DNA of 63,502 bases, counting the filler, from Neoconidiobolus thromboides FSU 785 (taxonomy: Eukaryota; Fungi; Entomophthoromycota), in the NCBI GenBank assembly GCA_025603075.1. It is 5 parts of 5 records of this genome, joined end to end, with 100 filler letters (N's around TTAATTAATTAA, not from the genome) between each part and the next. Parts side by side here need not be neighbours in the genome. Positions count along the whole stretch, not along the records: positions 13,657 to 44,620 come from MU626482.1; 4 more parts are not named here. One strand, written 5' to 3'. The position numbers and the translations under genes were made by a program. This document shows, piece by piece, positions 14,879 through 42,151 of the stretch; position 1 is the first letter of the stretch, and each line of letters opens with the position of its first letter. The notes beneath the pieces are model-generated. The model saw nothing but the letters and a program-made list of their open reading frames with translations. It did not search any database and was not told the origin of the DNA.

Positions 14879-15895
14879 TTAATCAAATATCTCTTCTCTA
14901 TTTAAACATTTTGGTAAATAACTAAGCGTATGTTCAAAAAAGCGACTGCAGTCAGTGCCAGTTATTTTTGAAAAAATAGTGTCAATAAGTTCAAATAATT
15001 CTTTGTCACTTTGTGGATCTTTTTCTCGAATTAACTCTATCCATTTAGTATATATACCCTCAATGGGATTTAAAAATGAAGAGTTGGGCGGTAAACGTAT
15101 TAATGTATGCCCTTTAGATTCAATAAGAGCTTTGGTGCTTGGATATTTATCAGTACATTCGCTATTCATAATTATTATAGCCTCTGATATTTTTGTTTTT
15201 GTTAATTTGGTAACAACCGACTCGACAAAATTTTTATATGATTCCGCAGTGTATCGTCTTAATTGAGTATGAAATCCTAGAATTCCATGCTTATTCATAG
15301 CACAGCACATTGATACAACTTTTTTAAAGGGCCTAATTTTTAATTTTTCCTTTTCTCCTTTTTCAGCTACACTTTTATTTACACGCGTTGTTACATTAAA
15401 CGCATCTTCATTAACAAATACAACTTTAGTGTCAATAAATTTTAATACATTATTTATAAAAATATTGGCATAAGAAGCTCGAATTCCCAAAGTACTCATG
15501 TCATTATTTTGAAGGGGTGGATCAATTCGTATAAAGGAGTAATTGAAGTTCTTTAGATTTTTTTTAACCTTCTCCCAACTTACTTTCAGCCCCATTTCAT
15601 CTTGAAATCTCTTAACAATACCTTTTATTGACAAATTACAATCTTCGTCGATCCAAGATTGTATCAATTTTCTTTGAGGTTCTGGCATAGTTTTCTTAGT
15701 ATATCCACGTTCTCCAATTTTTGGCTTTCTTCTATAATCCTCGCCATCTATGTATTTCTTTACAATAGACTGAACCGTTCTTTCGTTAAAACACAAGACT
15801 TTAGCAATACTTGTTGCATTAGATCCATTTATATACGCTTCAACGATCCTTTCTCTATCCTCATTACTAAGTTTCTTGTAATTTGCTTTGGGCAT
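14879..15895 (-). CDS. IS630-Tc1-mariner transposase-derived protein, copy L4 (338 aa, intact ORF, D1->N and D2->N)
   Basis: N-terminal HTH (DRERIVEAYING...IAKVLCFNERTVQSIVKKY), VVFVNEDAF, IIIMNSE, LPPNSSFLNPIE. Confidence 0.9.
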   Translation of the reverse strand: MPKANYKKLSNEDRERIVEAYINGSNATSIAKVLCFNERTVQSIVKKYIDGEDYRRKPKIGERGYTKKTMPEPQRKLIQSWIDEDCNLSIKGIVKRFQDEMGLKVSWEKVKKNLKNFNYSFIRIDPPLQNNDMSTLGIRASYANIFINNVLKFIDTKVVFVNEDAFNVTTRVNKSVAEKGEKEKLKIRPFKKVVSMCCAMNKHGILGFHTQLRRYTAESYKNFVESVVTKLTKTKISEAIIIMNSECTDKYPSTKALIESKGHTLIRLPPNSSFLNPIEGIYTKWIELIREKDPQSDKELFELIDTIFSKITGTDCSRFFEHTLSYLPKCLNREEIFD

Positions 15896-18037
15896 TAAGC
15901 TTTTGTAAACTTAAAAATAGTGAACAAAAATGAATTTATTTACGCTAGTTCAGCTTGAAATTGTCAAATTATAAAAACTGTTCCGAATAAAATTACATGA
16001 ATCCGTCAATTATTAGTAAATTAAATTTTTGTTTAATGACGTATGATAGTTTTTTTGATTTGCACTACTTAAATTGTCAGATTTTATCAGAATAGTCGGC
16101 AGTTAGATTTTTTCGTTGTTTTTAAATTATAACTAAATTCTGCTTAGTATGAATTAAAGGACAAAAAAAGGTGTATCCCTAGGTTAAATTAAAATTTTTG
16201 CTTACAAATCAACAATGAAGATATCTAATTGTAAGCCGTTCTAGCCAGGCAAAATACAAAACAAATCAGTAATTTTGGATTGGATATGAGCTACTTTCAT
16301 AATTGATGTGAAAAGCAGTTTTCGAAATAATTGAATGACTGACCTTTAGATATTAAAAAATATTGTAGCAGTTTTACTTGAAACATTAACATGAGCACGA
16401 ATTTCCAATGATTTTAGCTTTTATATACCCAGCCTAAACTTAGAACGATGTTATCGATGGATAAAGTAGTCAATTGATGTAAGGATCTTTATCCAAAGGA
16501 ATATTGAAACTGTCTTAGTATTTCCAGATTTTCTTCTAAGTTAAACATATCATTTCAAACAAATATTCAATTGATATTAAAGTTCCTTAGATGTGAAATA
16601 GAACGATGAAGGTGTTACGATATTCAGTGTAAAAAGGAGAAAAGTATAGATACAAGGTAGCAGGAAAGTGCACAAGTTGAGTTCAAGGTAGTAGGAAAGG
16701 GCAAAGCTTATTTAGTTTGGTATTCAAGAGAGTTGATAAGTTGGAATCTAACCAAATCAATATTAATAAAAGAGATGAAATAATCAAAATACTTATAATA
16801 AAACTATTTCAGGGACGGGTTTTATCAGGTGCTTTATGTGCTCGAAAAACACGTCAAAGAGTAAGCTTTTATTTTATTATTTCAAAAGATTCAAAATTCA
16901 ATCAGATTTTGTTTGTTATGAACGGAGTGAGTATAGTTTATGTGTGAACTGTGAAGTAATATATATTAGGGAATAGCTATGCTAAAGAATAAATAGAGCA
17001 AAAAGAAACTTGTCAGAAACTATACTTAAAGCTAGAGATGCTAGCGATTTGAAAGTGATAAAGCATAAAAGTAGAGCACTTTTATTTTGGCTGATGTATA
17101 TTTTTAACATTTTAGACGGCCAAAGCTTTCTAACGTAGAAAAATGAAAGTAAAGTTACTAAAAAAGTTTCTATCACTCGTATATTTTAATATGAAAGAGC
17201 CTTTATTGAATAGTATTTCATCCTCAAAAAACATAGATTGAGTTTATTTATTTGTAGTAAGTTATTATAAAGCCATAATGTATTTAAAGTAAAGAATTCG
17301 ACCAAAGTTTTATTAGCTTCAAAAAGTAATTACAAAGTATAATTTCGTCAAATAATCATCAAGTAATTGATCAAAGTTAAATTATAATCACTATCCTTTG
17401 ATAAACGAATTAAAATTTATGATTTATAGATTTCAAATTAGTTGTTTTATAATTGCTCTATTTACATATACTATTAACTCCAAGGTTTAGTAAGTTTTGC
17501 TTAATATGATTGTTTCCTTGTTATTTAAAAATACAGTATCAAACCTTATAATGTGATTCAAAACATCGTTGGTTTGTTGAAAATAATTATCAGCAAGCTC
17601 CATCACCTCTTGATGATCATTTTTGCGTAGTTTGAGTCAATTTAAAACGAGTTTGATGTAAAGTATTATATTATAGCATGTTCTCTATATATAAAGATAT
17701 AAATTTTACATCGAGTTCTCAGATAGACATTGCCATTTTTAGAGAATAGGGTCAAATCCTTCAATATAACTGTTCTATGTCAAACGCTTAAAAAGATAGT
17801 TTTTGACAATACTATGATATCCCTGTGCAAAACTAAGCTAAAACGAAGACACAGTCTTACAACCATGCGCTATAATATTTTCACATTGTTTGTGAAATTG
17901 ATTCCACGTTATTACAATTTTTAGTTACTATTATATATAGAAAATACTGTTGTATCAAGACAAAAAAAACTTCACTCAACATTTCAAAAGTAAAAATTTA
18001 AAACTTAAAAAGAATAAATTAAACTTAAACATATCAT

Positions 18038-19102
18038 TTAATAATCAAGTATCGCTTCTTTTCTCATACATCTTGGTAGAAAACGTAACATAGTATCATA
18101 AAAATAATTACAATCATTGCTACTTATTTCTGATAGAGCACTGTCGATAGCTTCAAACAATTCTTTCTCATTTTGTGGATCTTTTTCTCTTATCAACTGT
18201 ATCCATTTAGAGTACATAAACTCAATAGGATTTAGAAACAAAGAGGCAGGCGGTAAGCAGATTAACCTGTGTCCATTTGATCCAATGAGTCCTCTGATGT
18301 TTGGATCCCTATCAACGTATTCAGTATCCATGATTATCATAGCTCCTGATACGTTCATTTGGGCAAATTTAATAATAATTGATTCAACAAACTGATAGAA
18401 GGATTCAGTGTCAAAAGGATTTGCTTGAGTCTGATATTTAACTATACCATTTTTGCTCATTGCACAGCAGATCGATGTATCTTTTGTTTGAAACCCGCGA
18501 CCAAGGGGACCAGATTTCTTTTCTTTAATTGCTTTGACTTTAAATTTTTTGCGCATTGTAACTGAAAAAGTTGTTTCATTTATGAAAAATAGTTTAGAAT
18601 CATCAATCCTTGGTATTTGATTGAGGAAAAAATTGGCATAATAAGCTCGTGTTTCCAAAGTTGATAAACTGTTGTCCTGAGGAACAAAATTGGTATTTTG
18701 AGGAGCAGAATCTTTATTCTGTGAGACTGAATACACGCGCTTAAAAGAGAAGTGAAACTCCTTTAGATAGCTTAAAATAGTAGTCAAACTTGCATTTATC
18801 CCCATTTCACTCATGATTTTTTCCTTTAATGTTTTTAATATGATAGTACAGTCTTCATCAACCCAAGAGCGAACCGTATTTAATTGGTCATCTGATATAC
18901 GTCTTTTAGAACCTCCTTTCGGCTTCCTACTATAATCTTTCCCCTGGGTATACATTCTTATAAGACCATGAACAGAAGTACGGCAGAACCCCATCACTTT
19001 GACAATTTGTGCTGCACTATTCCCATTAATATAGGATCTAACGATCCTTTCTCTATCTTCATTAGTGATAGACTTGTATTTCTTTTGGTTTGTAGATGAC
19101 AT
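18038..19102 (-). CDS. IS630-Tc1-mariner transposase-derived protein, copy L3 (354 aa, intact, D1->N)
   Basis: HTH plus LFFINETTF, MIIMDTE, LPPASLFLNPIE. Confidence 0.9.
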   Translation of the reverse strand: MSSTNQKKYKSITNEDRERIVRSYINGNSAAQIVKVMGFCRTSVHGLIRMYTQGKDYSRKPKGGSKRRISDDQLNTVRSWVDEDCTIILKTLKEKIMSEMGINASLTTILSYLKEFHFSFKRVYSVSQNKDSAPQNTNFVPQDNSLSTLETRAYYANFFLNQIPRIDDSKLFFINETTFSVTMRKKFKVKAIKEKKSGPLGRGFQTKDTSICCAMSKNGIVKYQTQANPFDTESFYQFVESIIIKFAQMNVSGAMIIMDTEYVDRDPNIRGLIGSNGHRLICLPPASLFLNPIEFMYSKWIQLIREKDPQNEKELFEAIDSALSEISSNDCNYFYDTMLRFLPRCMRKEAILDY

Positions 19103-19735: not shown

Positions 19736-19834
19736 GAGGATGTTTTTTTTGATTTTATTACTTTTGCCATTTTTTAAGCTCAATTTGAGTGGAGAACTTG
19801 TTAGTGAAATTTTTAAACATAAAAATACCTCGTC
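19736..19834 (+). mobile_element. MITE copy 4
   Basis: ATAT|GAGGATGTTTTT...AAAAATACCTCGTC|ATAT. Confidence 0.85.
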
Positions 19835-19902: not shown

Positions 19903-20915
19903 TTAATAATCCAATATTGCTTTTTTTGTGCATTTTTATAGAAAACTGAGCATATTCTCATAGAAGTTGCTACAGTCAGATCCTGATATTTCTGATAAAA
20001 TACTATCAACAAACCAAACAGATTTTCCTCATTTTATCAATCTTTTTCTCTTACAAATTGTATCTGTTTATAATATTAAACTCAACAGGGTTCAGAAACA
20101 AAGAGGCAGGCGGTAAGCAGATTAACCTGCATCCATTTGTTTCAATAGTTCCTCTGATATTTAGGTCTCTATCAGCACAAAAATTATCCATAACTACCAT
20201 AGCTTCTGAGATGTTTGGTTAAGAAAATTTGTGGATGATTAATTCAACAAACTGATAAAAGGACTCAATATCAAATGGATTTACTTGAGTTCTATGGTTA
20301 ATTATACCATTTTTAGTCATCGCATAACATATCGACACGCTTTTCCTTTGAAGTCCAGGATCAAGGCGAGTGGACTTTTTTTAATTTCCTCTTAAACTTT
20401 GAACCCATCATAACGAAAAAGATTGTTTCACTCACAAAAAAATATCGGTGCCACCAAACCTTGTTATTTGGCCAAGAAAGATATTAGTATAGTGAGATCT
20501 TATTTCCAAAGTAACAAAATTATTATTTTGAGTAGCTGTATCAGTACATTTGAAAGAGAAATTAAATTCTTTCATATGCTTCGATATAGTTGATTTACCA
20601 GCACTTATTCCCATTTTATTCATAAGTTTCTCTTTTACTGTTTTTAATGCAATTTTACAATTTTCATCAACCCAAGATTGAATAATTTTTTCATGAAACT
20701 GTGATGTGACTACTCCTAGAGCTTGTTGCTCATAATTGTTTAAGAAAATTTTTCTTTCCAGTATACTTTTTTATAATATCGTTGACAGTTAAAGATCTAA
20801 AGCTCATTACTCTAGCAATGTTGATTTGGCTGTTCCCATTTACATGAGATTTATAAGTCCTTTTTCCATTAACATTGTTGTTACAGCTATATTTCTTTCG
20901 AATCGTAGATGATAT
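19903..20915 (-). pseudogene. Transposase-derived pseudogene, copy L2
   Basis: Start codon mutated (ATA), with stops and frameshifts. Retains ISAGKSTISKHMKEFNFSFK, FVSETIF and LICLPPASLFLNPVE, and ends ...AILDY*. Confidence 0.88.
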
Positions 20916-21258: not shown

Positions 21259-22416
21259 TTAATCAAATATTTCTTCTCTCCTATTACACTTTGGTAAGTA
21301 ATTAAGCATATATTCAAAACAACTATTACAATCAGATTCTGAGATCTCTGAAAAAACTGCACCCATAACTTGAAACAATTCATTTTCATTTTGTGGATCT
21401 TTTTCTCTGACCAACTCTTTCCATTTAGTATACATACCTTCAATAGGATTTAAAAACGGTGAATTAGGTGGTAAGCACATTAATCTATATCCTTTTGATT
21501 TAATAAATTTTCTAATATCTGGACCTTGATTAATATGTTTATTATCCATTATTACAATTGCCTCAGTTATATTTTTTTGTGCTAACTTAACAATGGTTGA
21601 TTCAATATATTGATGAAATGATTCCATTTTAAAAGGCAGTGCCTGAGTTTGATATTCAATTATACCAATTCTACCCATAGCACAACGTATGGATATGTTT
21701 TTTTTACGGATCCCGAAGTACTGAGATGTAGTTTCTTTTTTAGCCAATAACTTTTTATTTGTGTACATTGGAATAGTAAACGTTACTTCATTAATAAAAA
21801 TAGCTTTGGATCCAATAGAGTTTAGTATATGACTTATAAAGTTATTAGCATAAAAGGCCCGGCTTTCCAGAGTAGCCACATCATTATTTGTAGGGTCAAA
21901 CTTGATACGTTTAAAAGAAAAAGTAAATTTTTTCATATAACAAGATAATCGTATCAGAGGTATATTTAATTCCATTTCATTCATTAATTTTTCTCTTAAT
22001 TCTTTTAATGAAATTGTACAATCCTCATCAAACCAAGATTGCATTGCTTTTTGTTGGAGATCGGACAAATATATTTTTGGCTCTGGTATTACTTTTGGTT
22101 TTTTTAATCCTAATATTGTTTTTGATTTTTTTACTTCCTGTGTTGCTTTTATTCTTTTTAATGGTTTTGTCGCTTTTGGCTTGAAGATTACTTTTAGTTT
22201 TTTTGGTTCCCTTGGTTCCCGTACTACTTTTGCATTTCTTGTATAATCTTTCCCTTCATGGTACTTTTTGATAATGCCATGAACAGTATTATAACCAAAA
22301 CCTAATGCTTTAACAATGTCTTTCTCACTGAAGCCTTTGATGTATGAGTTGACTATTTCATGTCGTTCTTCAGTACTAGCTTGTTTAAACTTTATCTTTG
22401 GAAGTTGAGCTGACAT
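21259..22416 (-). CDS. IS630-Tc1-mariner transposase-derived protein, copy L1 (385 aa, intact, Lys/Pro-rich insertion after the HTH, D1->N)
   Basis: AIFINEVTF, VIVMDNK, LPPNSPFLNPIE. Confidence 0.9.
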   Translation of the reverse strand: MSAQLPKIKFKQASTEERHEIVNSYIKGFSEKDIVKALGFGYNTVHGIIKKYHEGKDYTRNAKVVREPREPKKLKVIFKPKATKPLKRIKATQEVKKSKTILGLKKPKVIPEPKIYLSDLQQKAMQSWFDEDCTISLKELREKLMNEMELNIPLIRLSCYMKKFTFSFKRIKFDPTNNDVATLESRAFYANNFISHILNSIGSKAIFINEVTFTIPMYTNKKLLAKKETTSQYFGIRKKNISIRCAMGRIGIIEYQTQALPFKMESFHQYIESTIVKLAQKNITEAIVIMDNKHINQGPDIRKFIKSKGYRLMCLPPNSPFLNPIEGMYTKWKELVREKDPQNENELFQVMGAVFSEISESDCNSCFEYMLNYLPKCNRREEIFD

Positions 22417-23867: not shown

Positions 23868-24100
23868 ATGGCTAAATTCCTTAGTCGAGCTGGTAGCAAT
23901 ATTGACCATTTACAAACACGATTATTGAATAATAATCATGATGATTATCGACCATTAAGGCCAAGTCCGTTTAATCCAGAACGGCAGTTATCGCATTCCA
24001 AAGTGAAAACAATTAAACAAGAGGATAATAAGTTGGGTAAGTAATAAATTTGTTCTTTAATTTTTATTTATTTTATTTCATTTATCAAAACTTTCAATTG

Positions 24101-24137
<37 letters not shown>

Positions 24138-27100
24138 CTTTTAGTGATTCTTATTTTTTATTTTAGGTACCTTTGAAGGGGTTTATTTACAAGTAGTTTT
24201 AAATATATGGGGCGTAATTTTATTTTTACGTTTAGGTTATATCCTTTCCCAAGTAGGTTATTTAATTACATTAGCTTTTTTTGCTGCTGGTTATTTAATT
24301 ACTACTTTTACTTCTTTATCCATTTCCGCTATTTCTACCAATGGTACTGTCAGAGGTAAATATTTTATATTTTTTATATTTTTTATATTTTTTATATTTT
24401 TTATATTTTTTATATTTTTTATATTTTTTATATTTTTTATATTTTTTAATCTCTTTTTATTGATACGGTTTTTGAATTTTATTAGGTGGTGGTCCTTATT
24501 ATATGATCTCTAGATCTCTAGGGCCCGAGTTTGGTGGTAAGTATCGAATTTATTGTTTACTATAAGCTTATTAATTCAAATGGATTACCTTATCAGGTAG
24601 TATAGGTATAATAGTCTATTTAGGTATCTGTTTAAATGCAGTATTAAATGCGTTAGCATCTGTGGAAGGCATAGTAGAATTTTTTGGTAAAGAACACGGT
24701 ACTTTAATTAAATGGTTACCAGAAGGACAGGTAATTAGAATTTTATTATATCATTATTAATTAAAAAATAATAATCATTTTTTATTATTCAGTGGTGGTT
24801 ATTATTATATGGTAGTATAGTTTTACTAATCTCAATAAGTATTTGTTTTATGGGTTCTAAAATAGTAGCTAAAGCTAGTTTAATATTCTCCATAATCCTT
24901 TTAATCTCCACATTATCGATCTTTTTTTCTTTTTTAATTCAACCCCCTTTCATCGATTCTGAGAAATCTGTCATATATACTTCCTTTAGTTGGGATACCT
25001 TAAGATCCAATCTTTATCCCAAATTATATCCTAACGAAAATGGTACAATGGAAACTTACCAATCTATTTTTAGTGTATTATTTCCAGCTTGTATAGGTAT
25101 TATGGCTGGTGCTTCTATGTCTGGTGATTTAAAAGATCCATCAAGATCTATACCAAAGGGTACCCTTTGGGCTATATTAACTACTTTTATTGCTTATATA
25201 TTATTATTGACGATGTTTGCAGCAACGGTTTCTAGAGATACTTTAATTGCAGATATTAATGTTATGTCTCATGTAAGTCTTTATTGTTCTTCTTTTTATT
25301 ATAGTTATTGATACTTTCTATTTTATTCTAGATTGGTTTATATCCACCCTTAGTCAATGTAGGTGTATTAGCTACCTCTATCTCATCATCATTTAGCTGT
25401 TTAGTAGGAGCATCTAAAATTTTACAAGCATTAGCTAGAGATCATTTAATCCCTGGTTTCTATCCCTTTGGTTATGGAAGTCCAGTCGGGGATGAACCAA
25501 TTATAGGTTTTTTATTAACATATGCATTAGCACAATTATTTTTATTTGCAGGTGAAATGAATTTGGTAGCTGGTATTGTTACTATGTTTTTTGTACTTAC
25601 TTTTGGTGTGACGAATTTAGCATGCTTCTTATTGAAAGTGGGTGGTGCGCCTAATTTTCGACCTTCTTTTAAATATTTTAAGGGTTGGACTGCTTTTGTT
25701 GGGTTTTTACTTTGCTTTTCCACTATGTTTTATGTGTCACCAATGCAAGCTACACTATCTACTACTTTTGCAAGTTTTATATTTGCATTAGTTCATTTTA
25801 CTACTCCACCAAAAGCTTGGGGGGATGTAACTCAATCTTTAATTTATCATCAAGTAAGAAAATATTTATTAAGATTAGATACACGTAAAGAACATGTCAA
25901 ATTTTGGCGACCACAAATTTTATTATTAATCAATGATCCAAGACAACAATATCAATTAATGTTATTTTGTAATTATTTAAAAAAAGGTAGTTTATTTATA
26001 ATTGGTCACATATTAAAAGGAGAATTAAGAGAACAATTAATGGAAATGAAAAAACAAAAATTGAGTTTTATGAAATTAATAGATATTATGAAAATGAAAG
26101 CTTTTATTCAATTAGATGTTGCAAAAAATGAAATGTTAGCTGCAAGATCCATTTTATTAGGGGCTGGTTTAGGGGGCATGGTACCCAATATTGTTGTTTT
26201 AGGTCAATTTAATTTAAATCATTATAGAAGGAGATCGAATAGTGGAATTGGAATGGAAACTGAAGATGAAGATAATGAAGAAATTGATACTTTTGAACAA
26301 ATATTTAAGCAACAATATGAACAATTTAAAATTGGAGATCGATTGGGACCCTTACCAACGGATGAAATGAAATCTGAATTACCCATTTCTATTATGGATT
26401 ATGTTAGTATAATTGAAGATTCTTTATTATTAAATAAAGCCGTGGCTATTGCTTTTGGATTTCAAGAAAATCCATTGTTACCTTGTCTACCAAAAGAATT
26501 ACAAAATTATCAAAGTAATTTTAAAAAATATATTGATCTTTGGCCTATTCAAATGGTCAATTGTAATGAACATAATACAAATCAAGCTATTAATTTTGAT
26601 TCATATACAATGGTATTACAATTAGGATGTATTTTACATATGGTACCTCAATGGAAAGAAAGATATGAGTTAAGAGTGAATTGTTTTGTGGAACATAAAG
26701 TGGATGTCGAAGAAGAGAAATCAAGAGTTAATAAATTATTATTGAATTTAAGAATACCTGCTCAATTAAATGTATTTTATTTGGATGAGCAAGCTGTACC
26801 TGAATATGATAAATTATTTGGTGAAAATCAACAAAATTACAGGACTAATGAACCAATTGAATTTGATAAGAATAAAAATGAAGAAAGTCAAAATAAACAA
26901 CAAGCTTTTTCTACTTCATTAAGAATTAATTTACCTTTACCAGATGGTTATGATCAAACATTTGATACTAATAATCATACTGAAGATGAGTGTTCAGATA
27001 AAGATAGCGAAAATGCATCGGATGAAATGTCCGATTTTTTAATAGATTTAGATCTTGTAGAAGAACCTATAATGTATCATCAACCTCATGAGACAGCTAA

Positions 27101-27335
27101 AGAATTTAATGAATTACCAGTTCATTTACAATATTCAATATTAAATCAATTAATTTTATTAAATTCTAATCAGACTGCCATTGTGTTTTCAACATTACCT
27201 GCACCTGATTTAAATTGTTCAAAAAAAGAAAATCATTGTTTAAATTATTGTCAATCATTAGAACAATTTACAAAGAATTTACCACCAACTATCTTAGTAC
27301 ATGCTAAATCTTTGACCGTAACTACTTCTCTTTAA
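23868..27335 (+). CDS. SLC12 cation-chloride cotransporter (Vhc1-like), multi-exon
   Basis: [114 protein letters not shown]. Confidence 0.95.
24367..24447 (+). repeat. Intronic 9-bp tandem repeat (ATATTTTTT)n
   Basis: About 9 tandem units read directly in an SLC12 intron; an (AAT)n tract lies at ~24103-24135. Confidence 0.9.
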
Positions 27336-27518
27336 AACATGTATGTGAATGTTCTACTTTTTTTTATAGTGTTTTTTTTAATATCAAAAATAAAATTATA
27401 AAAAAAATTAATTATTTTAATATTATTTTTATTGTTTTTATTAATTTAAGCTATAAAAAAATAATTTATTCAAAAAGAAAATATTTCAATTTCAGTTTCA
27501 ATTTTATATTTTAATCAA

Positions 27519-29835: not shown

Positions 29836-29872
<37 letters not shown>

Positions 29873-32408: not shown

Positions 32409-32678
32409 TTTTTAATTAATTGAATTAACTGAAACTTAAAAAATTGAAATTTTATTGTAACTACTTCAATTTCTACCAATTTGATCCTTAATTGAAGTTC
32501 CTCCCTTAAAAATTACCTCATCTTTTTTAAAAATAGGTTGATTTCATTGGTGCTAATCAGAATCAATTGGATATTTGTTAACTTCCCATAATTTCTTTAA
32601 TTTCTATGCATCATTGTTAAGAATTGATATCAATTTATTTTGAATTTCATTCAACAAATTAAATAAAAATCAATATAA

Positions 32679-33152
32679 ATGGGTCAAGTTAGTCGAAGTA
32701 TAGGAGTGCTTAGTGGTATTGTATTCAGTACTGGGTTTATATACGCATTTCGTAAAAATATTGAACGTGACATTCATAGTCAAACTGAAAGACTAAAGGA
32801 TGTGGATTATTTATTAAATACTTCGTTTTTGCCTGAAGCTAAAAGGGCTGAAATAGAGGTAAGTGTTTTTTGATCATAATTGAATTAAATCTTAATAAAA
32901 TGCAGGATAAAATAAAATCATGATAAAAAGTGATATATTAATAAATTGTTTAATTTCTAGGATCAACGTCCAGTTTACAGAGAAGTTTTAGCTAAACCAT
33001 ATGTATTGGAGTTAGTTGAAGGAGCTAAATCACATGCTCAAAAAGAGTTAATACCAGAAATTAAAAGTCAATGGAATGGTAAATTATATCAATTTGCTTC
33101 AGCTTTGAACAATATCGAAATTGATGTCAAAAATTGGTCCTTTAAATGGTAG
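32679..33152 (+). CDS. MIC12: Probable MICOS subunit Mic12 (Aim5)-like, 2 exons
   Basis: Gly-rich N-terminal TM (GVLSGIVFSTGFIYAF), a coiled coil, and EIKSQWNGKL resembling the Mic12 K..WN.E motif. Confidence 0.55.
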
Positions 33153-33551
33153 TCAAAGAAGAATATGAAGTTGTTAAATTTTTAATTAAAATGAAAGTTT
33201 AGGTTTAAATTTTATATAATTATAAGTTTTTTGGGGATTTAAGTTATCATTTGATATTTTTAGAATTTTATTGATTTGTTTTTAATGAATTTATTATTTC
33301 ATATAATTAAAGGTTATAGATGTTTAGTTTATATTTATTACTACTATTCAAAATATACCTATATCACTTATTATAATATTTTATATTATTTATACAAACT
33401 AAAACCTCTAAACAATCCAAAAGTCTAGTAAAAAAAAATAAACCAATCAATTTAACTTTTTTTCAACTCTAAGTCATTCATTGGTTTAACTTCCAATCCG
33501 AAACATTTATTAAAGCTAAGAATTTTTTTTAAAAGCTTGTTTACCTTAACT

Positions 33552-34802
33552 ATGGATCAAATTGAAACTCAGTTAAATAAATTGGAAGAAGCCAAGTAAG
33601 TAAAATCAAAAGAATAGTAGAATTTATACTAAAAGATATTTATTTATAGAAAGAGTGTACAAGTGGAAAAAGCCATTCCCTTAAATTATGATTTAGGGTT
33701 ATTATGTGCTACAGATATTAATACCATGGATAACACTAAGTTCAAGTAAGACAAGACACTAAAATTGAAACTCTTCACTTCTAACACCTTTTTTTTCCAA
33801 AACAGAAAACTAGATGATAACCTTGATGATTATTTAAAAAGATATTGCCGTGATGGTATTCAATTATTATTAAATCAAGTATTTTCTCTCCCTGTAGTAG
33901 CTAGTGAAGATGGTTATATGGTTACATTACCAAAACCAAATACTTCATTACCACGTGAAAAGCCAGTAAGTTCTCTTATTTTCCTTCTTATTCTTCTTGT
34001 TTTTTAACTTAAATTTCTAGATTCCAAAACCTAAACCATTAACACGATGGGAGAAGTTTGCTAAGGCTAAAAACATCACGAATAAAAAACGAGAACGTAT
34101 GGTTTATGATGAAGAAAGTGGAGAATATAAACCACGATATGGATATAAGGGTATTAATCAAGTAGCTAAAGATTGGTTAATGGAAGTACCAGATGGTGAA
34201 GATCCAAATGTTGATTTATATGCTAAAGAAAGAGAAGATAAAAAATCAAGAGTTGAAAAGAATTTAAAGAGACAAATGAGAAATGTGAGAGAAGCTAGCG
34301 GAGAAAATAAAGAAAAGGAAACTCCTAAAGAAATAGCTGCTAAATTAAGACAAGAAAGAACAGTTAGAAAAGGCACCCTTGAAAGAGATGCTGTATTGGC
34401 TAAAGTTTCTACAGCTTCTATGGGTAAATTCGATAAAAAAATTGAGGGCGAAGCTAAAGCTAAGGGAGTTAGAAGAAAGGTAAACAGACTTGTTTTATTC
34501 CTGAAATAGTATATTTATATAAAAATTTCGTTAGTTTGAACCTACCATTGGTAAAGATTTAAAGCTTGAAAAGGATAGTAGTTTAAAAATCTTAAATAAA
34601 TTAACGAACGGTAGTGCAGCTAAAGAACAAAAGAAAAAAGAAGTGGTCAATGTTAGAAAGGTAAATATCTATTGACTATAAGATGCTTTTGTAGATTATT
34701 TTTTATTTTTTATTTTTTTAGGCTATTAAAGTTACTGGTGCTAAAGCCAAAGAGGACCCTAAATCTAAAGGAAAAAGTTCTAAAGGCAAAGGTAGAAAAT
34801 AG
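33552..34802 (+). CDS. RRS1: Ribosome biogenesis regulator Rrs1, multi-exon
   Basis: YDLGLLCA, RDGIQLLLNQVFSLP, LPREKPIPKPKPLTRWEKFAKAK, VYDEESGEYKPRYGYKG, STASMGKFD. Confidence 0.95.
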
Positions 34803-35619: not shown

Positions 35620-36732
35620 ATATGGAAAAAGATACATAAATAAATACAAAAAATTATTAATAAAGATCGAGAAAGAATTATCGATTTACATATCAATAAG
35701 TCAAATGGCATCGAAGTTTCCAAAATATTAGACTTTGCTATTAGTACTGTTCAAGGAATTATAGAAAAGTATCTTGATCGTAAAGACTATTTAAGAAAGC
35801 CGAAAGGATATTACAAAACAACTCTTAACTGATTCTCAACAAAAAGCTATTTAATCTTGGATTGATAAATATTGTATTACTAAATCGAAAGCCATACAAA
35901 AAAGATTAAGGGAAGGAATGGATATAGATGGAAGTTTATTAGAAATAGAATCTTACATTAAAATCTTTAATTTCAATTCAAAACGTATCAATGTGCCATC
36001 TTATGATAATGATTTGACTACTTTTAAAGACAAGAGCATTTTATGCTAATTACTTTGTTAACAACATGGGGATGTATTTTTGTGTTTAAGAATTTTACTA
36101 ACAAATTTTCCGCTTAAATGGCGCTTAAAAAATCGAAAAAGTAATGAAATCAAAAAAAACACACTCCCATATATTAAAATTTATCGATTCTAAGATTCTG
36201 TTTATAAATGATACTACATTTAGTATTATAATCAAACGAATAAAAGTATTATCTAGAAGTAAAAAGACAGACTCACTTACTAAAGGACTTTGTAAAAAAA
36301 TCATATCTAGGTTATGATATGGATATTAATGGAATAATTGAGTATCAAACTCAAATGCTTACTTTTGATATTGAATTGTTTTATGAATTTATTAAATCCG
36401 TTGTTATCAAATTTTAAAAAAAAAACGGAAGCAATAAATATTATAAATAACGAATATGTTTACAGAGATCCAAAAGTTAGAGAACTTGTTAACCCAATGG
36501 ACATGTTTTATTTCGTTCACTACTGAATTTTATATTTTTAAATCCTGTTGAAATTATGTATAGCAAATTAGTGCAATTGATCAGAACAAAAAATTCACAA
36601 AATGAGGATGGGTTATTTAAAATTTTTGGTAACGCTTTATCACAAATAATTGATAGTGATTATAAGGATTTTGATGAACATATGCTTGGTTGTTTAGCAA
36701 GATGTATGAAAAAAGAAGAGCTACTCGATTAA
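35620..36732 (+). pseudogene. Transposase-derived pseudogene, copy R1, interrupted by a MITE
   Basis: NKDRERIIDLHIN...STVQGIIEKYLDRKDYLRKPK, YANYFVNN[MITE]ILKFIDSKILFINDTTF, LNPVE, ...MKKEELLD*. Start approximate. Confidence 0.87.
36068..36168 (-). mobile_element. MITE copy 6, inserted into pseudogene R1
   Basis: ACAT|GGGGATGT...ACACTCCC|ATAT. Removing the element plus one 4-bp TSD restores N-N-I-L-K-F. Confidence 0.9.
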
Positions 36733-37059: not shown

Positions 37060-38061
37060 ATGAAATATAAAAATATCACTAACGAAGACCGAGAAAAAAT
37101 TGTTAGTTCATATATCAATGGATCCAGTGCAACGAATATTGCCAAAGTAATGGGCTATAATAGAGCTACTGTTTTTGGTATTATACAAAAGTATACAACT
37201 GGTAATGATTTTAAAAAAAAGGCAAATGTAGCTCAACGAACATTTATATCGGATGCTCAACGAAAAATTATGCAATCATGGATTAATAAAGACTGTACCA
37301 TTAAACTGAAAACAATAAAAACAAGATTGAAGGATGAAATGGGGATAGATGCAACATTGTCATGTATAGAATCCTATATGAAAGCATTTAATTTCTCTTT
37401 TAACCGTCTTAATTTACCTCCTCAAAACAATGAGCTGACTACTTTGGAAGCTCGTGCCCTTTATGCTGATAGTTTTATAAACAATGTAGCAAAGTATATA
37501 GGCTCAAAGGTTCTATTTATAAATGAAGCAACGTTTAGTATTTCAATGTCAACAAATAAAAATTTATTATCTGCAAAAAAGAGAGCTGATTTTATTGGCA
37601 AAGGATTTCGTAAAGCAATTGCATCAATGTGTTCTGCTATGAGTATAAATGGGTTAATTGAACATCAAACTCGAATGATGATTTTTGATACTGAATCATT
37701 CTATAAATTTATTGAGTCAGTTGTTGCTAAATTAGAGAAAACAAGCATGTCAGAAGCAATAATTATTATGGATAATGCATGCATTGAAAAATATCTAAAA
37801 GTCAAAGAACTTATTGAGTCAAAGGGACATAGCTTAATTTGTTTGCCGCCCGCATCTGCGTTTTTAAATCCTAATGAAGTTATGTATATTAAATGGAAAG
37901 AATTAATCAGAGCAAAGGATCCACAAGATGGAAATGAATTAATTAAGGTTATTAATAAAGTTTTATCACAAATAGCTGATAATGATTGTAAGGATTTTTA
38001 CGAACATATGCTTAGTTATTTGCCAAGGTGTATGAAAAAAGAAGAGATACTTGATCAATAA
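37060..38061 (+). CDS. IS630-Tc1-mariner transposase-derived protein, copy R2 (333 aa from ATG 37060, intact, D1->N)
   Basis: VLFINEATF, IIIMDNA, LPPASAFLNPNE; 34 residues separate D2 and E. Confidence 0.9.
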   Translation: MKYKNITNEDREKIVSSYINGSSATNIAKVMGYNRATVFGIIQKYTTGNDFKKKANVAQRTFISDAQRKIMQSWINKDCTIKLKTIKTRLKDEMGIDATLSCIESYMKAFNFSFNRLNLPPQNNELTTLEARALYADSFINNVAKYIGSKVLFINEATFSISMSTNKNLLSAKKRADFIGKGFRKAIASMCSAMSINGLIEHQTRMMIFDTESFYKFIESVVAKLEKTSMSEAIIIMDNACIEKYLKVKELIESKGHSLICLPPASAFLNPNEVMYIKWKELIRAKDPQDGNELIKVINKVLSQIADNDCKDFYEHMLSYLPRCMKKEEILDQ

Positions 38062-38380
38062 ATTCGTTAAGCTTTTACATTATTTTAGTTTTCTGGCACA
38101 AGATTTGATGTATACCTGTCTCGCTTATCCTTCTGTAAGCAAAGCGCCTCATAATAATTTGTGAGTATGATGAACACACACAATTACAAAGTATTTCAAG
38201 ATGAAATTAGAGCTCTAAATTAGTAGTGAAAGTTATTTTTGTATTTCAATATATTAATTATTTTATAATAAGCTTAAATTTAAAAGTTCGAATTGTAAAA
38301 TTATTAGCTGAATTACTCAACAAATATAGTTTAAATTTATTAGTCCAAAAATCAAATTTATCCTTTATTTATAGTTTTAA

Positions 38381-39416
38381 ATGTCATCTCTAACTCGAAA
38401 GAAATATGCTTCTATAAGTAGTGAAGGAAGAAAAAGAATTGTCAACTCGTATATCAATGATTACAGTGCAGGACGAATTGTTAAATTAATGGATCGCGAA
38501 GGAGTTACTCTTTATGATGTAGTAAAAAAGTATACTGATAGAAAAGATTATTTAAAAAACCACAGACAATAAACGATAAAATTAAAAAGATATCGAATTC
38601 TAATGAAAAGGCTATCTAATTTTGGTTTGATGAAGGCTGTAGCATATTGTTAAAAGCAATAAAGCAGAGATTCATGGATGAAATGGGGATGGACGCAAAC
38701 ATATCAACTATACCAAACTATATAGAAGAGTTTGACTATTCTTTCAAGCGTATTAATCTAGTTACTCAAATAAATAATTTAGTTACTTTGGAAACCTGAG
38801 TATATTATGCTAATTTCTATATCAATCAAGTACAAAGGTTTGATGAATCTGAGATATCCTTTATAAACAAAGTGACGTTTTTGATTACAATGTATAAAAG
38901 ACTTAAAAAAGGGAATTGAAACAAAAAACGTTCTCCTATTGGTCCTGGGTTCAGTATAAAAAACGTATCACTATGGTATGGGATAGCTAAAAATGAAATA
39001 GCCAAATATAAGGCTCAAGTAAATCCACCCAATGTTGAATCCTTTTATCACTTTATTAAATCAATTATTACTTAACTTACTCAAACAAATGTATCAAGAA
39101 TTACAACAACTATGAATAATGATTATATCGATAGAGATCCAGATACCAGATGACTCATTCAAGCAAATGGGCAGAGGTTAATCTGCTTACCACCTAGCTC
39201 TGTATTTCTAAGTCCTATTGAGTTTATGTGTTTTAGATGGATATAACTTATAAGAGAAAAAGATTCAAAGAATGACAGGGAGTTGTTTGATATGTTTTAT
39301 ATGTTTTGTGTAGTTGATAGCCTTATATCAGAAATAGCTAGTAATAGTTGTCGTTTTTTTACAATACCATGTTACGCTTTTTATCTGGATGCATAAGAAA
39401 AGGGGTGGTATTTAAT
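38381..39416 (+). pseudogene. Transposase-derived pseudogene, copy R3
   Basis: MSSLTRKKYAS...RIVNSYIN, SFINKVTF, RLICLPPSSVFLSPIE, with multiple stops and frameshifts. End approximate. Confidence 0.87.
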
Positions 39417-39746
39417 AGATTTTATGAGGATTTTACATTGCTATTTTTTCAATTTTATTTCATCTTATAAGCTTTTATCTATTCCTAAGTCGCCCACTCT
39501 TCGATAAGTTAAATACTTTATAGTAATTTGAAGATAAGATAAACAACTTTATAGCTACAAAATATTATAATAAAAAACTAAATACTAAATTTACAATGAA
39601 AGTAACTCTTTTATTATAACTTACTAATGATTTTTTACCAAGTTTAAACTTAATAAAAATTATTCAAATCTTTGATGTTAGACAACAAAAATTACCTAAA
39701 TTGATTAAAGCACAAAAAGTAGCTTATTCTTTTTTCTTAATTTTAA

Positions 39747-40796
39747 ATGTCGTCTCCAACTAGAAAGAAATACAACTGTACAGATAATGCTGATAGAGAA
39801 AGAATTGTAAAATCGTACATCAATGGGAACAATCCACCTGACATTGCTAGAGTAATGGGCTACAATAAAAGGACTGTTATGGATATTATAAAAAAGTATA
39901 CTGAAGGGAAAGATTTCTATAAACAACCACGAACAGGAAGGCCCAAAAATAAAGTTATATCAGAATCTCATTTAAAAATTATCCAATCTTGGGTTGATGA
40001 AGATTGTAAAATTGCATTAAAAACAATAAAAGAGAAACTTATGAATGAAATGGGAATAAGTGCTGGCAAATCAACTATCTCGAAGCATATGAAAGAATTT
40101 AATTTCTCTTTCAAGCGTATTAATCCAATCACTCAAAGTAATGATATAGTTCTCCAAGACAATAACTTGGTAATTTTGGAAACGCGAGCCTATTATGCCA
40201 ATTTCTTTATGAATCAAATGCAAAGGTTTGATGATTCTAAATTTTTCTTTATAAATGTAGCAACCTTTTCTGTTATGATGCGTTCAAAGTTTAAACAAGA
40301 AGAAATTAAAAACAAAAAGTTTACTTCCCTTGGTCCTGGATTCAGTCTAAAAGATATATCAATGTATTGTGCTATAAGTAGAAATGGTATAGTTAAATAT
40401 CAGAATCAAGTAAGTTTTTTTGATACTGAATCATTTTATCGTTTCATTGAATTGATCATCGCTCAACTCGCTCATAAGAATATAACGGATGCTATGATAT
40501 TCGTGGATAATGATTATGTTGATAAAGATGCAAATATTAGAGGACTTATTGGATCAAATGGACATAGATTAATTTGTTTGCCACCGAATTCCCCGTTTTT
40601 AAATCCTGTTGAGTCTATATATACTAAGTGGATGCAATTGATAAGAGCAGAGGATCCACAGAATGAGAAGAAGTTATTTGAAGTTATGGATAGTGCTTTG
40701 GTGGAAATAACCAGTAATGATTGTAATTCTTTTTACAATACTATGCTACATTTTTTACCCAGGTGTACAAGAAAAGAAATAATATCTAGTCAATAA
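39747..40796 (+). CDS. IS630-Tc1-mariner transposase-derived protein, copy R4 (349 aa, intact, D1->N)
   Basis: FFFINVATF, MIFVDND, LPPNSPFLNPVE. Confidence 0.9.
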   Translation: MSSPTRKKYNCTDNADRERIVKSYINGNNPPDIARVMGYNKRTVMDIIKKYTEGKDFYKQPRTGRPKNKVISESHLKIIQSWVDEDCKIALKTIKEKLMNEMGISAGKSTISKHMKEFNFSFKRINPITQSNDIVLQDNNLVILETRAYYANFFMNQMQRFDDSKFFFINVATFSVMMRSKFKQEEIKNKKFTSLGPGFSLKDISMYCAISRNGIVKYQNQVSFFDTESFYRFIELIIAQLAHKNITDAMIFVDNDYVDKDANIRGLIGSNGHRLICLPPNSPFLNPVESIYTKWMQLIRAEDPQNEKKLFEVMDSALVEITSNDCNSFYNTMLHFLPRCTRKEIISSQ

Positions 40797-41111
40797 CAAA
40801 TACAGTTTCATTTATAGTATTGATGTTTATTTAGTTTACAAGTCTTGGTATATATTTGAGTCATATTAATCCTTTATTGAATGAAAGTTCTTTTGTGATT
40901 TATTTAAAAAACAGTAACTGAAACTATAGAATAATGTAACATAAATTTTATACACTGAATCAATGATGGAAACTACTCTTTTCTTTTCACTATTTTCTAT
41001 TTAAACAAAATTTAAATCTAAATCAAGGCTTAAATAAAAAACTAAAATTCTTAATTATCAAAAAATAATTTGTTCTTTCAATTTTAAAAAAGGTTGTTTT
41101 TATAAGTTCAA

Positions 41112-42151
41112 ATGTCATCTCCAACTAAAAAAAACTGGCTCTTATTAGGAATAATGATAGATGAGGGATTATCAAATCCTGCATTAGAAGAGACATTGTA
41201 AAAGAGATTGCTAAAATGATGGGATATAGTGAGAAAGCTGTTCGTAGAGTTATTCAAAGATATAACGAAGGAAAAGCTTATCTTAAAAGACCAGTGCCAG
41301 GAAGGCCTAAAAATAAATTTATATCGGTTTTCCAAAAAAACAATTCAACCTTGGCCTGATGAAGACTGTACTATTTCATTAAATAGAATAAGGAAAAAAC
41401 GCATGAATGAAATGAGAATAAACCCAAGCAAGATAACTGTAAAAATGTATGTAAAAAAGTCTCACTAGTCTTCCAGGCATATTGATCCAGCCACTCAAAA
41501 TAATGAGTTAACTCCTCAAAAAATGATTTGGGTACTTTAGGAACGCAAGCTTATCATATCATTTACTTTATGAATTAAATGTGAAGATTTGATGAATCTA
41601 AGCTTTTTTTGTGAATGAAGCAACGTTTTTCCTTGGAGCATGTACAAAGTATAGACAAAAAGAAATCACTCGCAAAGAATTCCCGTCTCTTCGCACTAGA
41701 TTCGGAATGAACAACATACCACTGTGCTGCGCAATGAATAAACATGGTATAGTTAAATTTAAAACACAAATAGATTCTTTTGACATTGAATCATTTTACC
41801 AATTCATTGAAATGATAATGATTGAACAAGCTCAAAAAATATATTAGATACAACGTTTGTAATGAATAACGAATATGTTGATAGATATCCAAATGTAAGA
41901 GGACTCATAAGATCAAATAGATACATACTGATTTTTTTTACCACTCAATTTTTCGTTTCTAAACCCTATTAGTTCTATATATACTAAATGGATACAGTTA
42001 ATTTGTGCAAAAGATCCACAAAATGAAAAAACTTTTTGAAGTTATGGATGGTGCTTTTTTTAGGGACTTCAGAATCTTATTATAGCAATCTCCATGGAAA
42101 CATATTTGGCTTTCTACTAAGGTCTATAAAAAAGGAGCGATATTTGGTTAG
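41112..42151 (+). pseudogene. Transposase-derived pseudogene, copy R5
   Basis: MSSPTKKN start, DEDCTISL, FVNEATF, CCAMNKHGIVKFKTQ, AKDPQNEK, with frameshifts. End approximate. Confidence 0.86.

What the first reader, a model, noticed from the sequence alone, without database searches (positions are those of the whole stretch)
14879..42151. Nine-member array of catalytically dead IS630/Tc1 transposase-derived genes sharing a D->N substitution: candidate domesticated system
Seen: there are five intact intronless ORFs (14879, 18038, 21259, 37060, 39747) and four pseudogenes (19903, 35620, 38381, 41112). They have an HTH plus an RNase H-like DDE fold with D34E spacing. The first catalytic position reads N in all five intact copies (FVNED, FINET, FINEV, FINEA, FINVA) and in three pseudogenes (FINDT, FINKV, FVNEA); the fourth has S. 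All intact copies lack the Tyr of LPPYSP (LPPNS/LPPAS) and the His of DNAxxH. The proteins are clearly diverged yet keep full-length frames, and I see no per-copy TIRs or TA duplications. Known: active IS630-Tc1-mariner transposases need the DDE triad, and dead or co-opted transposases exist as host factors (CENP-B/Abp1 from pogo; the Paramecium PgmL partners of PiggyMac). Inference: one inactivated ancestor was domesticated and then expanded by birth-and-death. It could act as a DNA-binding or chromatin factor, a dominant-negative transposon repressor, or an accessory to a rearrangement machine.
Basis: partly seen in the sequence, partly recalled or inferred. Interest (0 to 1): 0.92.

Follow-up and report, generated by a model that had tools for sequence, protein, structure and literature searches.

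The report
Expanded family of dead Tc1-like transposase genes
An insect-pathogenic fungus, probably Neoconidiobolus thromboides, keeps and transcribes a many-copy family of genes derived from a Tc1-like "jumping gene" enzyme whose cutting site is disabled the same way in every copy, so they are probably kept for binding DNA, not cutting it.

Summary
The piece holds five intact, intronless Tc1/IS630-like ORFs and four decayed copies. The first catalytic Asp is Asn (codon AAT) in eight copies and Ser (AGT) in one pseudogene. Spacing is D34E, and the LPPYSP Tyr and DNxxxH His are lost. There are no per-copy TIRs.

New findings:
- The contig probably comes from Neoconidiobolus thromboides FSU 785. 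The family is larger than nine: at least 16 copies at four or more loci, at least 9 of them intact, all intact ones with Asn.
- The family is monophyletic (100/100). Its sister is a canonical D-D-E element with perfect 30-bp TIRs.
- Copies spread by tandem and segmental duplication and gene conversion, carrying pieces of a neighbouring gene along.
- Median pairwise dN/dS is 0.35, equal in the HTH and catalytic domains. Intact copies evolve about half as fast as their pseudogene sisters. A roughly 90%-identical haplotype gives omega of about 0.5.
- c3, c4 and c5 lie in genuine RNA assemblies, colinear with the genome.
- The AlphaFold model (pLDDT 90.7) matches Mos1, SETMAR and Sleeping Beauty.

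Verdict: a selectively maintained, catalytically disabled, transposase-derived gene family evolving by birth and death. The function is untested. I favour non-cleaving DNA binding, possibly as a transposon antagonist. It is a new member of a known kind, of moderate interest.

The parts
14879..15895 (-). c1: intact 338-aa Tc1-like gene of subclade A. The triad reads N-N-E, so the second Asp is lost as well.
18038..19102 (-). c2: intact 354-aa gene of subclade C with triad N175-D259-E294. This is the copy modelled by AlphaFold2.
19903..20915 (-). Pseudogene psA of subclade C, sister of c5. It has 2 or more frameshifts and 5 stops. The D1 codon is AGT (Ser).
21259..22416 (-). c3: intact 385-aa gene of subclade B, with a Lys/Pro-rich insertion between the HTH subdomains. 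It is covered colinearly by an RNA contig.
35620..36732 (+). Pseudogene psB of subclade B, sister of c4. It has 3 or more frameshifts and 8 stops, and is split by a MITE-like insertion at 36059-36172.
37060..38061 (+). c4: intact 333-aa gene of subclade B, present in RNA assemblies.
38381..39416 (+). Pseudogene psC of subclade C, with 2 frameshifts and 6 stops. It still lies in RNA contigs.
39747..40796 (+). c5: intact 349-aa gene of subclade C. It is 60% identical to c2, reads FINVA at the D1 motif, and is present in RNA assemblies.
41112..42151 (+). Pseudogene psD of subclade C, with many frameshifts and stops. It reads FVNEA at the D1 motif.
16238..17417 (+). Decayed copy of a neighbouring gene (Pfam PF06677, Auto_anti-p27-like) inside the 3162-bp repeat unit. 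It lies divergent from c1 and its zinc-ribbon cysteines are lost.
13657..14254 (.). Further relic of the same spacer unit at the left contig end. Bases 13657-14009 are 98% identical, inverted, to 44268-44620.
43387..44620 (.). Mirror-image relic of the spacer unit at the right contig end. It forms the right arm of the terminal inverted repeat.
23868..34509 (.). Central block of ordinary host genes between the two outward-facing arrays. It holds a spliced SLC12-type transporter gene, two Asn-rich ORFs and an RRS1 fragment.

Best explanation
This is a lineage-specific multigene family derived from one DD34E Tc1/IS630-like transposase. That ancestor had already lost its first catalytic Asp (GAT to AAT) and its terminal inverted repeats.

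Shown:
- The genes no longer move as transposons. They multiply by tandem and segmental duplication and gene conversion. The units are about 1.35 kb (right arm) and about 3.1 kb (left arm), and the larger one drags a piece of a neighbouring gene along.
- Copies are continually lost to pseudogenes (birth and death).
- Intact copies appear in RNA assemblies as intronless, colinear contigs (strand not known) and are kept by purifying selection over the whole protein.

Inferred mechanism: the proteins keep the bipartite paired-like HTH domain and a folded RNase H-like domain. In that domain D2 and E3 are retained, but D1 and several DNA- or metal-contacting residues (GRS, the His after D2, the Tyr of LPPYSP) are gone. 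They would therefore bind specific DNA, and probably oligomerise, without cleaving it.

My preferred role, at roughly 35-40%, is as antagonists of related Tc1-like or MITE elements. They would act as poison subunits or as competitors for transposon ends. A role as transcription or chromatin factors gets about 30%.
For: Homology and fold:
- Pfam DDE_3 scores above its cut-off, with HTH matches.
- The PDB profile search hits Sleeping Beauty.
- The AF2 model has pLDDT 90.7. Foldseek's top hits are the Mos1 transpososome, SETMAR/Metnase and the Sleeping Beauty catalytic domain.

Disabled active site:
- D1 is N in 9/9 intact genes, always codon AAT. It is D in 97% of 65 canonical relatives.
- G178, G188/R189, G194, H264, Y286 and P288 are lost together.

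Single origin: the N clade has 100/100 support with a stem of 0.72. Its sister P0154 is a 1234-bp element with perfect 30-bp TIRs and an intact DDE.

Not transposing:
- No TIRs above chance.
- Head-to-tail units of 1340-1420 bp and of 3162 bp.
- The spacer carries a decayed PF06677 gene that is also found beside paralogs on another contig.
- Subclades A, B and C recur at different loci, in mirror order on the two arms.
- Gene-conversion tracts are present.

Selection:
- Across 36 pairs, median dN/dS is 0.35 (HTH 0.34, catalytic 0.37).
- Pseudogene branches of 0.33-0.42 compare with 0.16-0.18 for their intact sisters.
- A 333-codon ORF survives 0.2 neutral substitutions per site with P = 0.0015.
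- Against a roughly 90% haplotype there are 31 synonymous and 38 non-synonymous differences, none of them a stop. The ts/tv-corrected omega is about 0.54, p = 0.0085. One in-frame 3-nt insertion is also seen.

Transcription: runs X2, X6, X7 and X8 show GT..AG spliced joints in the neighbouring SLC12 gene and zero depth over 22400-23199. The same runs carry colinear contigs over c3, c4 and c5.
Against: - No function was tested.
- The RNA contigs carry no strand information and also cover pseudogenes and some spacers. Transcription alone is therefore weak evidence of use.
- dS is near saturation (about 1), so the paralog dN/dS values are rough.
- The haplotype comparison uses only the variants that the tool listed.
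- No ortholog was found in any other species. Long-term host retention across species is therefore unproven.
- The family's high copy number fails a standard domestication criterion.
- No D-intact partner transposase was found in N. thromboides, and the nearest canonical relative is only about 41% identical. This weakens the dominant-negative idea.
- Whether an N-D-E site is truly inactive is inferred from other DDE enzymes, not measured.
Confidence: 0.65

Rival explanations
1. These are neutral relics of an old burst of a Tc1-like transposon. The copies are dead elements that decay passively, and some ORFs are still open by chance.
For: Four of the nine window copies are pseudogenes. The genes are of transposon origin and intronless. 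Their nearest relatives are ordinary transposons.
Against: Copies differ by 30-35% at the DNA level, yet at least 9 ORFs of 333-385 codons are open. Neutral survival at 0.2 substitutions per site is 0.0015 per copy. dN/dS is about 0.35 in all 36 pairs. Intact copies evolve at half the rate of their pseudogene sisters. Spacers between units can no longer be aligned, while the ORFs can.
Confidence: 0.05
2. The family is still mobile. Either the N-D-E variant is a working, non-canonical transposase, or the copies are non-autonomous elements moved in trans by an undetected D-D-E transposase in the same genome.
For: The family is dispersed over at least four loci. D2 and E3 remain conserved. A MITE-like repeat with imperfect TIRs is abundant in the genome, so some DNA transposase has been active.
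Against: There are no per-copy TIRs and no remnant of the sister element's TIR. Copies sit head-to-tail with spacers of about 300 bp, or in 3.1-kb units that include a neighbouring gene's fragment. That pattern fits duplication, not cut-and-paste. No near-identical copies were seen: paralogs are 40-60% identical in protein. Besides D1, several other conserved catalytic-core residues are lost. From general knowledge of DDE enzymes, D-to-N at the first carboxylate abolishes catalysis.
Confidence: 0.07
3. This is a selfish but immobile family. The genes are kept by selection for a function that serves a transposon lineage and not the host, for example as self-regulating repressors. Alternatively, the arrays persist through gene conversion in repeat-rich, possibly subtelomeric, regions with only weak benefit to the host.
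For: Three of the four loci lie at contig ends, which points to repeat-rich regions. Gene-conversion tracts are present. Omega is only moderately low, 0.35-0.54. No orthologs are known outside this species.
Against: Gene conversion cannot keep reading frames open across paralogs that are 40-60% identical. No cognate active element was found. No telomere repeats lie at the contig ends.
Confidence: 0.18

Closest known systems
Canonical DD34E Tc1/IS630-like transposons: P0154 (element L004) and its relatives in microsporidia, Hydra, Anopheles and metagenomes
   Same: They share the same length (about 335 aa), a bipartite HTH plus DDE_3 architecture, D34E spacing and the LNPIE motif. They are 35-41% identical and form the sister group in the tree.
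   Different: The canonical elements keep D-D-E, LPPYSP, GRS and DNxxxH. They are compact units of about 1.2 kb bounded by perfect TIRs. The window genes have N at D1, lack those residues and have no TIRs. Whether the parent family is DD34E/Gambol (named in PMC7386202) was not tested.
SETMAR/Metnase, a primate gene whose transposase domain derives from mariner
   Same: It is a Tc1/mariner-fold transposase domain kept by the host with one catalytic carboxylate replaced by Asn. It is a Foldseek hit to the model.
   Different: From general knowledge, in SETMAR the third residue is changed (DDD to DDN). SETMAR is single-copy, fused to a SET domain and has orthologs across anthropoid primates. Here the first residue is changed, there is no fusion, and the family is multi-copy and lineage-specific.
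Drosophila Tc1/mariner-derived genes (CG14478, CG4570, cag, toy, LOC26532114; PMC13548663)
   Same: They are transposase-derived, lack TIRs and TSDs, are under purifying selection, are expressed and form monophyletic clades.
   Different: The Drosophila genes are low-copy and syntenic across species. They retain either the DNA-binding module or the catalytic module, and CG14478 keeps an intact DDE. The fungal family keeps both modules under equal constraint, has a dead triad, and has many copies in arrays.
Catalytically inactive transposase paralog families such as Paramecium PgmL (piggyBac-derived) and the pogo-derived CENP-B/TIGD and fission-yeast Abp1/Cbh proteins
   Same: They are multi-member families of transposase-derived proteins without catalysis that bind DNA or partner proteins. 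This rests on general knowledge and on abstracts listed.
   Different: They belong to different superfamilies (piggyBac, pogo), have established roles and are not organised as tandem arrays with frequent pseudogenes. No functional link to them was tested here.

Membership tests
IS630-Tc1-mariner transposase (protein fold) | N-terminal bipartite (paired-like) helix-turn-helix DNA-binding domain | tested here: met
   Pfam HTH_SB, HTH_23, HTH_28 and HTH_29 match the N-terminus. Most are below their cut-offs, but c5 passes three of them. The profile hits the Sleeping Beauty PAI subdomain at E = 1e-4. The AF2 model has two three-helix bundles with pLDDT above 90.
IS630-Tc1-mariner transposase (protein fold) | RNase H-like DDE_3 catalytic domain | tested here: met
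   DDE_3 scores 33-63 bits against a cut-off of 28.6 in all five proteins. Foldseek hits Mos1, SETMAR and Sleeping Beauty catalytic domains with E from 1e-12 to 1e-6.
IS630-Tc1-mariner transposase (active enzyme) | Intact D-D-E/D catalytic triad | tested here: not met
   The first Asp is Asn in all 9 intact family members. It is D in 97% of canonical relatives. c1 also lacks the second Asp.
DD34E subgroup | [quoted passage not shown] | tested here: met
   D259 and E294 in c2. c1 was counted directly as well.
Autonomous Tc1-like transposon (element) | Each copy bounded by terminal inverted repeats and a TA target-site duplication | tested here: not met
   Flank-versus-flank inverted alignment is no better than shuffles for 8 of 9 copies and borderline for one. 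The repeat finder found no per-copy inverted pair. The sister element's TIR is absent.
Domesticated transposase gene (criteria listed in PMC13548663) | No transposition hallmarks and low copy number | tested here: not met
   Transposition hallmarks are absent. The copy number is high: at least 16 copies at four or more loci.
Domesticated transposase gene (criteria listed in PMC13548663) | Intact coding capacity under selective constraint | tested here: met
   At least 9 ORFs are intact. Median dN/dS is 0.35. Intact branches are half as long as pseudogene branches. Haplotype omega is about 0.54.
Domesticated transposase gene (criteria listed in PMC13548663) | Intact orthologs in distantly related species with microsynteny | tested here: inconclusive
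   Nothing closer than about 41% identity was found outside N. thromboides among 1.84 billion representatives and 5.8 billion clusters. Unannotated genomes could not be searched. A roughly 90% haplotype exists in related samples.
Domesticated transposase gene (criteria listed in PMC13548663) | Monophyletic clade separate from progenitor transposases | tested here: met
   100/100 support with a stem length of 0.72.
Domesticated transposase gene (criteria listed in PMC13548663) | Expression and a biological function in vivo | tested here: inconclusive
   Colinear RNA contigs cover c3, c4 and c5 in runs shown to be RNA by spliced joints. The strand is unknown and function cannot be tested with these tools.
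DD34E/Gambol family | Phylogenetic placement with reference Gambol transposases | not tested
   Anopheles relatives appear among the homologs, but no reference Gambol sequence was available. The name is a lead from memory and from PMC7386202.

The most novel reading that the evidence does not exclude
The arrays are a host-encoded, fast-turning-over defence against DNA transposons. Each paralog would be a catalytically dead look-alike that binds the ends of Tc1-like or MITE elements, or poisons their transposase oligomers. Tandem duplication, divergence and loss would track the changing transposon population. A less likely version has them as non-catalytic guides or partners for a programmed DNA rearrangement.
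Probability: 0.2. Interest if true: 0.8.

Novelty: new member of a known kind. Interest (0 to 1): 0.55.

Why it matters
Transposase domestication is usually described as rare, single-copy events conserved across species. Here a whole transposase (DNA-binding domain plus catalytic fold) with one shared inactivating change has instead become an expanding gene family. It is under selection and present in RNA, and it sits in tandem and mirrored arrays in an early-diverging fungus.

It offers a tractable natural case for two questions. What can a folded but dead DDE domain be selected for? Can dead transposases serve as genome-encoded transposon antagonists?

It also shows that public gene models for this family are truncated or missing, so similar families are likely under-counted.

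Tried and rejected
- First protein search: the word-based search with c4 alone found almost nothing. The exhaustive profile search was needed.
- Source names: cluster look-ups for the best canonical hits gave only unnamed metagenome or Logan contigs.
- RNA genes: tRNA and Rfam scans of the piece found nothing.
- Telomeres: telomere-repeat searches at the contig ends found nothing.
- Run X2: it first looked like DNA because its depth was flat over the right array. A second lay over the spliced SLC12 gene and a silent intergenic stretch showed it is RNA.
- dN/dS methods: YN00 failed on these divergent pairs. ML dS for c3-c4 ran to saturation. NG86 and branch-length comparisons were used instead.
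- Giant-transposon idea: the 31-kb contig has 98% identical inverted ends. I rejected reading it as one giant TIR-bounded element, because the repeat runs exactly to both contig ends. That is what an assembly break in a repeat looks like.
- D-intact relative in the same genome: I could not test this. No eukaryotic genome collection can be searched here, and loci from the look-up of encoding contigs cannot be used to find sequencing runs.
Full report
**What is there**

The piece (13657-44620) is a 30,964-bp, AT-rich contig with 18-31% GC. It holds five intact ORFs of 333-385 codons and four decayed copies of the same gene:

- Left arm, all on the minus strand: c1, c2, psA and c3, within 14879-22416.
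- Right arm, all on the plus strand: psB, c4, psC, c5 and psD, within 35620-42151.
- Between them lies a block of ordinary genes. These are a spliced SLC12-type transporter, two Asn-rich ORFs and an RRS1 fragment.

The intact proteins are only 41-60% identical to one another. Each pseudogene has at least two frameshifts and five or more stops. psB is also split by a roughly 110-bp repeat.

**Family assignment and the active site**

- All five proteins pass Pfam DDE_3 and carry N-terminal HTH matches.
- A profile of them hits the Sleeping Beauty PAI subdomain and catalytic domain among solved structures.
- An AlphaFold2 model of c2 built on a 74-sequence alignment is confident (pLDDT 90.7, pTM 0.78).
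- Its best Foldseek matches are full-length Mos1 transpososome chains, then the SETMAR/Metnase, Sleeping Beauty and Mos1 catalytic domains.

An exhaustive profile search found 168 representatives at E below 1e-30. Aligned with 124 of the listed hits, the first catalytic position is D in 109 sequences. It is N in all five window proteins.

Against 65 canonical relatives, the family has lost D175 (to N, 9/9), G178, G188/R189, G194, H264 (the His after the second Asp), Y286 (the Tyr of LPPYSP) and P288. It keeps D259 (8/9), E294 (9/9), the LPP.S.FLNP.E block and most fold-defining residues. It has its own fixed changes, N175 and Y297.

Spacing is D34E. The Asn codon is AAT in all nine intact genes, one transition from GAT. 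psA has AGT, one further transition.

**Source and true size of the family**

Three short annotated paralogs and one full-length paralog (P0153, 338 aa) come from Neoconidiobolus thromboides FSU 785, assembly GCA_025603075.1. The window's own protein sits on a contig of exactly the piece's length. The contig is therefore most likely from that fungus (Entomophthorales). This is an inference.

Other contigs of that assembly carry more copies:

- MU626419.1 has three intact genes (FINDA, FINEA, FINEA) and one pseudogene, spaced about 3 kb apart.
- MU626260.1 has P0153 at its very end and a frameshifted copy about 13 kb away.
- MU626318.1 has a decayed copy at its end.

The family thus has at least 16 copies at four or more loci, at least 9 of them intact, and every intact copy has Asn. 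Two paralogs keep the LPPYS Tyr. Public gene models are truncated, for example 227 aa for c4 and 122 aa for c3.

**Origin and mode of spread**

In a protein tree the Asn genes form one clade (100/100) on a long stem (0.72). The sister is P0154. P0154 is a canonical D-D-E, LPPYSP transposase carried on a 1234-bp contig bounded by perfect 30-bp inverted repeats. Its relatives occur in microsporidia, Hydra, Anopheles and many metagenomes. This points to one inactivation event in one ancestor.

The copies show no sign of transposition:

- The best inverted match between the flanks of each copy equals shuffled controls.
- The sister element's TIR is absent.
- The right arm is a head-to-tail series with a period of 1340-1420 bp. 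Only the ORF plus or minus 20-40 bp is still alignable between units.
- The left arm has a 3162-bp unit whose spacer is a decayed copy of a PF06677 (Auto_anti-p27-like) gene. That gene also sits, divergently oriented, beside a paralog on MU626419.1.

Three subclades recur at different loci, and on the window's two arms they lie in mirror order. From the centre outward the left arm reads B, C, C, A and the right arm reads B, B, C, C, C. This pattern fits block and inverted duplication followed by local duplication and decay.

Tracts of near-identity point to gene conversion. The contig's two ends are 98% identical over 353 bp, inverted. The first roughly 85 codons of P0153 are shared with the MU626318.1 pseudogene.

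**Selection**

- Nei-Gojobori dN/dS over all 36 pairs of nine intact genes has a median of 0.35 (dN 0.40, dS 1.14). The HTH half (0.34) and the catalytic half (0.37) give the same value. dS is close to saturation, so these figures are rough.
- In a DNA tree, each pseudogene's terminal branch is about twice as long as that of its intact sister. The pairs are psB 0.42 vs c4 0.18, psA 0.33 vs c5 0.16, psC 0.35 vs c2 0.18, and 0.27 vs 0.085 for the MU626318.1 pseudogene vs P0153.
- In simulation, a 333-codon ORF stays open after 0.2 neutral substitutions per site with probability 0.0015.
- Public runs from closely related samples contain a second haplotype about 90% identical to the window, over the SLC12 gene as well as c3 and c4.
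  - The 69 listed differences in c3 and c4 are 31 synonymous and 38 non-synonymous, with no stop.
  - There is also one in-frame 3-nt insertion.
  - Allowing for the strong transition bias, omega is about 0.54 (binomial p = 0.0085).

Constraint is real but moderate.

**Transcription**

Runs X2 (same organism label as the best DNA holder, which may be the window's source), X6, X7 and X8 are genuine RNA:

- Their contigs skip four GT..AG introns of the SLC12 gene.
- Their depth is zero over the intergenic stretch 22400-23199.

In the same runs, contigs lie colinearly, without gaps, on c3 (word depth 137 in X2, against 447 for SLC12), on c4 and on c5. The genes are therefore intronless and represented in RNA.

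Caveats:

- Contigs have no strand.
- Word depth is a poor measure of expression.
- psC, psD and some spacers are covered too.

**Interpretation**

The evidence supports a selectively maintained, catalytically disabled, transposase-derived gene family that evolves by birth and death.

What it does is inferred. The whole transposase architecture is kept under even constraint. D2, E3 and the surrounding helix stay conserved, while D1 is fixed as the isosteric Asn. This is what one expects of a protein that still folds, binds DNA (and perhaps metal) and oligomerises but cannot cut. In other RNase H-like enzymes, D-to-N mutants bind substrate without cleaving it (general knowledge).

I favour an antagonist role against Tc1-like or MITE elements, at about 35-40%, for three reasons:
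- The family turns over fast.
- Omega is only moderately low.
- A MITE-like repeat with imperfect TIRs is abundant in this genome and in its RNA, and has inserted into psB.

Against this role, no D-intact partner was found in N. thromboides, and the nearest active relative is only about 41% identical. A transcription or chromatin-factor role (about 30%) is equally compatible with the data.

**Comparison with known cases**

By the six criteria used for Drosophila Tc1/mariner domestications (PMC13548663):

- Met: homology, absence of TIRs and TSDs, intact ORFs under constraint, and monophyly.
- Inconclusive: expression and in-vivo function. RNA contigs are present, but their strand is unknown and function cannot be tested here.
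- Not met: low copy number.
- Unresolved: conserved syntenic orthologs in distant species.

Those Drosophila genes keep either the DNA-binding or the catalytic module. This family keeps both. SETMAR is the closest structural parallel: a mariner domain with one carboxylate changed to Asn. There, however, the third residue is changed, and the gene is single-copy and fused to another domain (general knowledge; Foldseek hit).

Multi-member dead-transposase families exist, such as PgmL and CENP-B/TIGD. I therefore rate this a new member of a known kind, unusual for its tandem-array, high-turnover organisation. Literature searches found no report of it.

**Rivals**

- Neutral relics are essentially excluded by the selection evidence.
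- Continued mobility (an active N-D-E enzyme, or mobilisation in trans) is unlikely. There are no TIRs, the units are tandem or segmental, and several catalytic-core residues are lost together. It has not been biochemically excluded.
- A selfish or weakly beneficial family that persists in repeat-rich regions remains possible (about 0.18).

Noticed in passing
window 19731-19839, 23253-23357, 36059-36172 (inverted), 42435-42546; many more in L001-L003: A repeat of about 100 nt, 82-88% identical between copies, has imperfect terminal inverted repeats and looks like a MITE. One copy splits pseudogene psB. In RNA assemblies its summed word depth is about 8,800, against about 450 for the neighbouring gene, and many contigs run on into different flanks.
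   Followed up: partly
window 13657-14009 and 44268-44620: The two ends of the contig are 98% identical inverted copies, and the repeat runs exactly to both contig ends. This is probably an assembly break inside a longer, recently homogenised inverted repeat.
   Followed up: partly
window 16238-17417, 13657-14254, 43387-44620; L003 11070-12021: The spacers of the left-arm repeat unit are decayed copies of a PF06677 (Auto_anti-p27-like zinc-ribbon) gene. An apparently intact copy sits divergently beside a paralog on MU626419.1.
   Followed up: partly
window 21259-22416, 24888-25095, 37060-38061 (runs X3, X6-X8): Samples under other organism labels hold both a sequence identical to the window and a second haplotype that is about 8-10% diverged. 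It covers the SLC12 gene as well as c3 and c4. This could be a hybrid, a diverged allele or a large duplicated segment.
   Followed up: partly
proteins P0020, P0023, P0043 (Anopheles atroparvus, funestus, stephensi): Mosquito 'uncharacterized' proteins of 464-479 aa are Tc1-like, with an N-terminal extension of about 130 aa and broken triads. Two of them also have Asn at the first catalytic position. This looks like an independent candidate domestication.
   Followed up: no
L004 1-1234 (Logan contig of ERR3671687): The nearest canonical relative is a compact element whose perfect 30-bp TIRs are built from a repeated TGTCAAAAT subunit. The source organism is unknown.
   Followed up: partly
L002 125-1150 and L005 125-1141: Two contig ends of the N. 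thromboides assembly start with the same sequence. The first roughly 85 codons of a decayed copy are identical to the intact P0153, and the rest is about 70% identical. This suggests a gene-conversion tract.
   Followed up: partly
window 22100-22230 (c3 residues ~66-105): c3 carries a Lys/Pro-rich insertion of about 35-40 residues between the two HTH subdomains. No other copy has it.
   Followed up: no
window 37378-38058 and 21262-21627: The public gene models cover only the C-terminal 227 aa of c4 and 122 aa of c3. c1, c2 and c5 did not appear as predicted proteins in either protein database searched. The family is under-annotated.
   Followed up: partly
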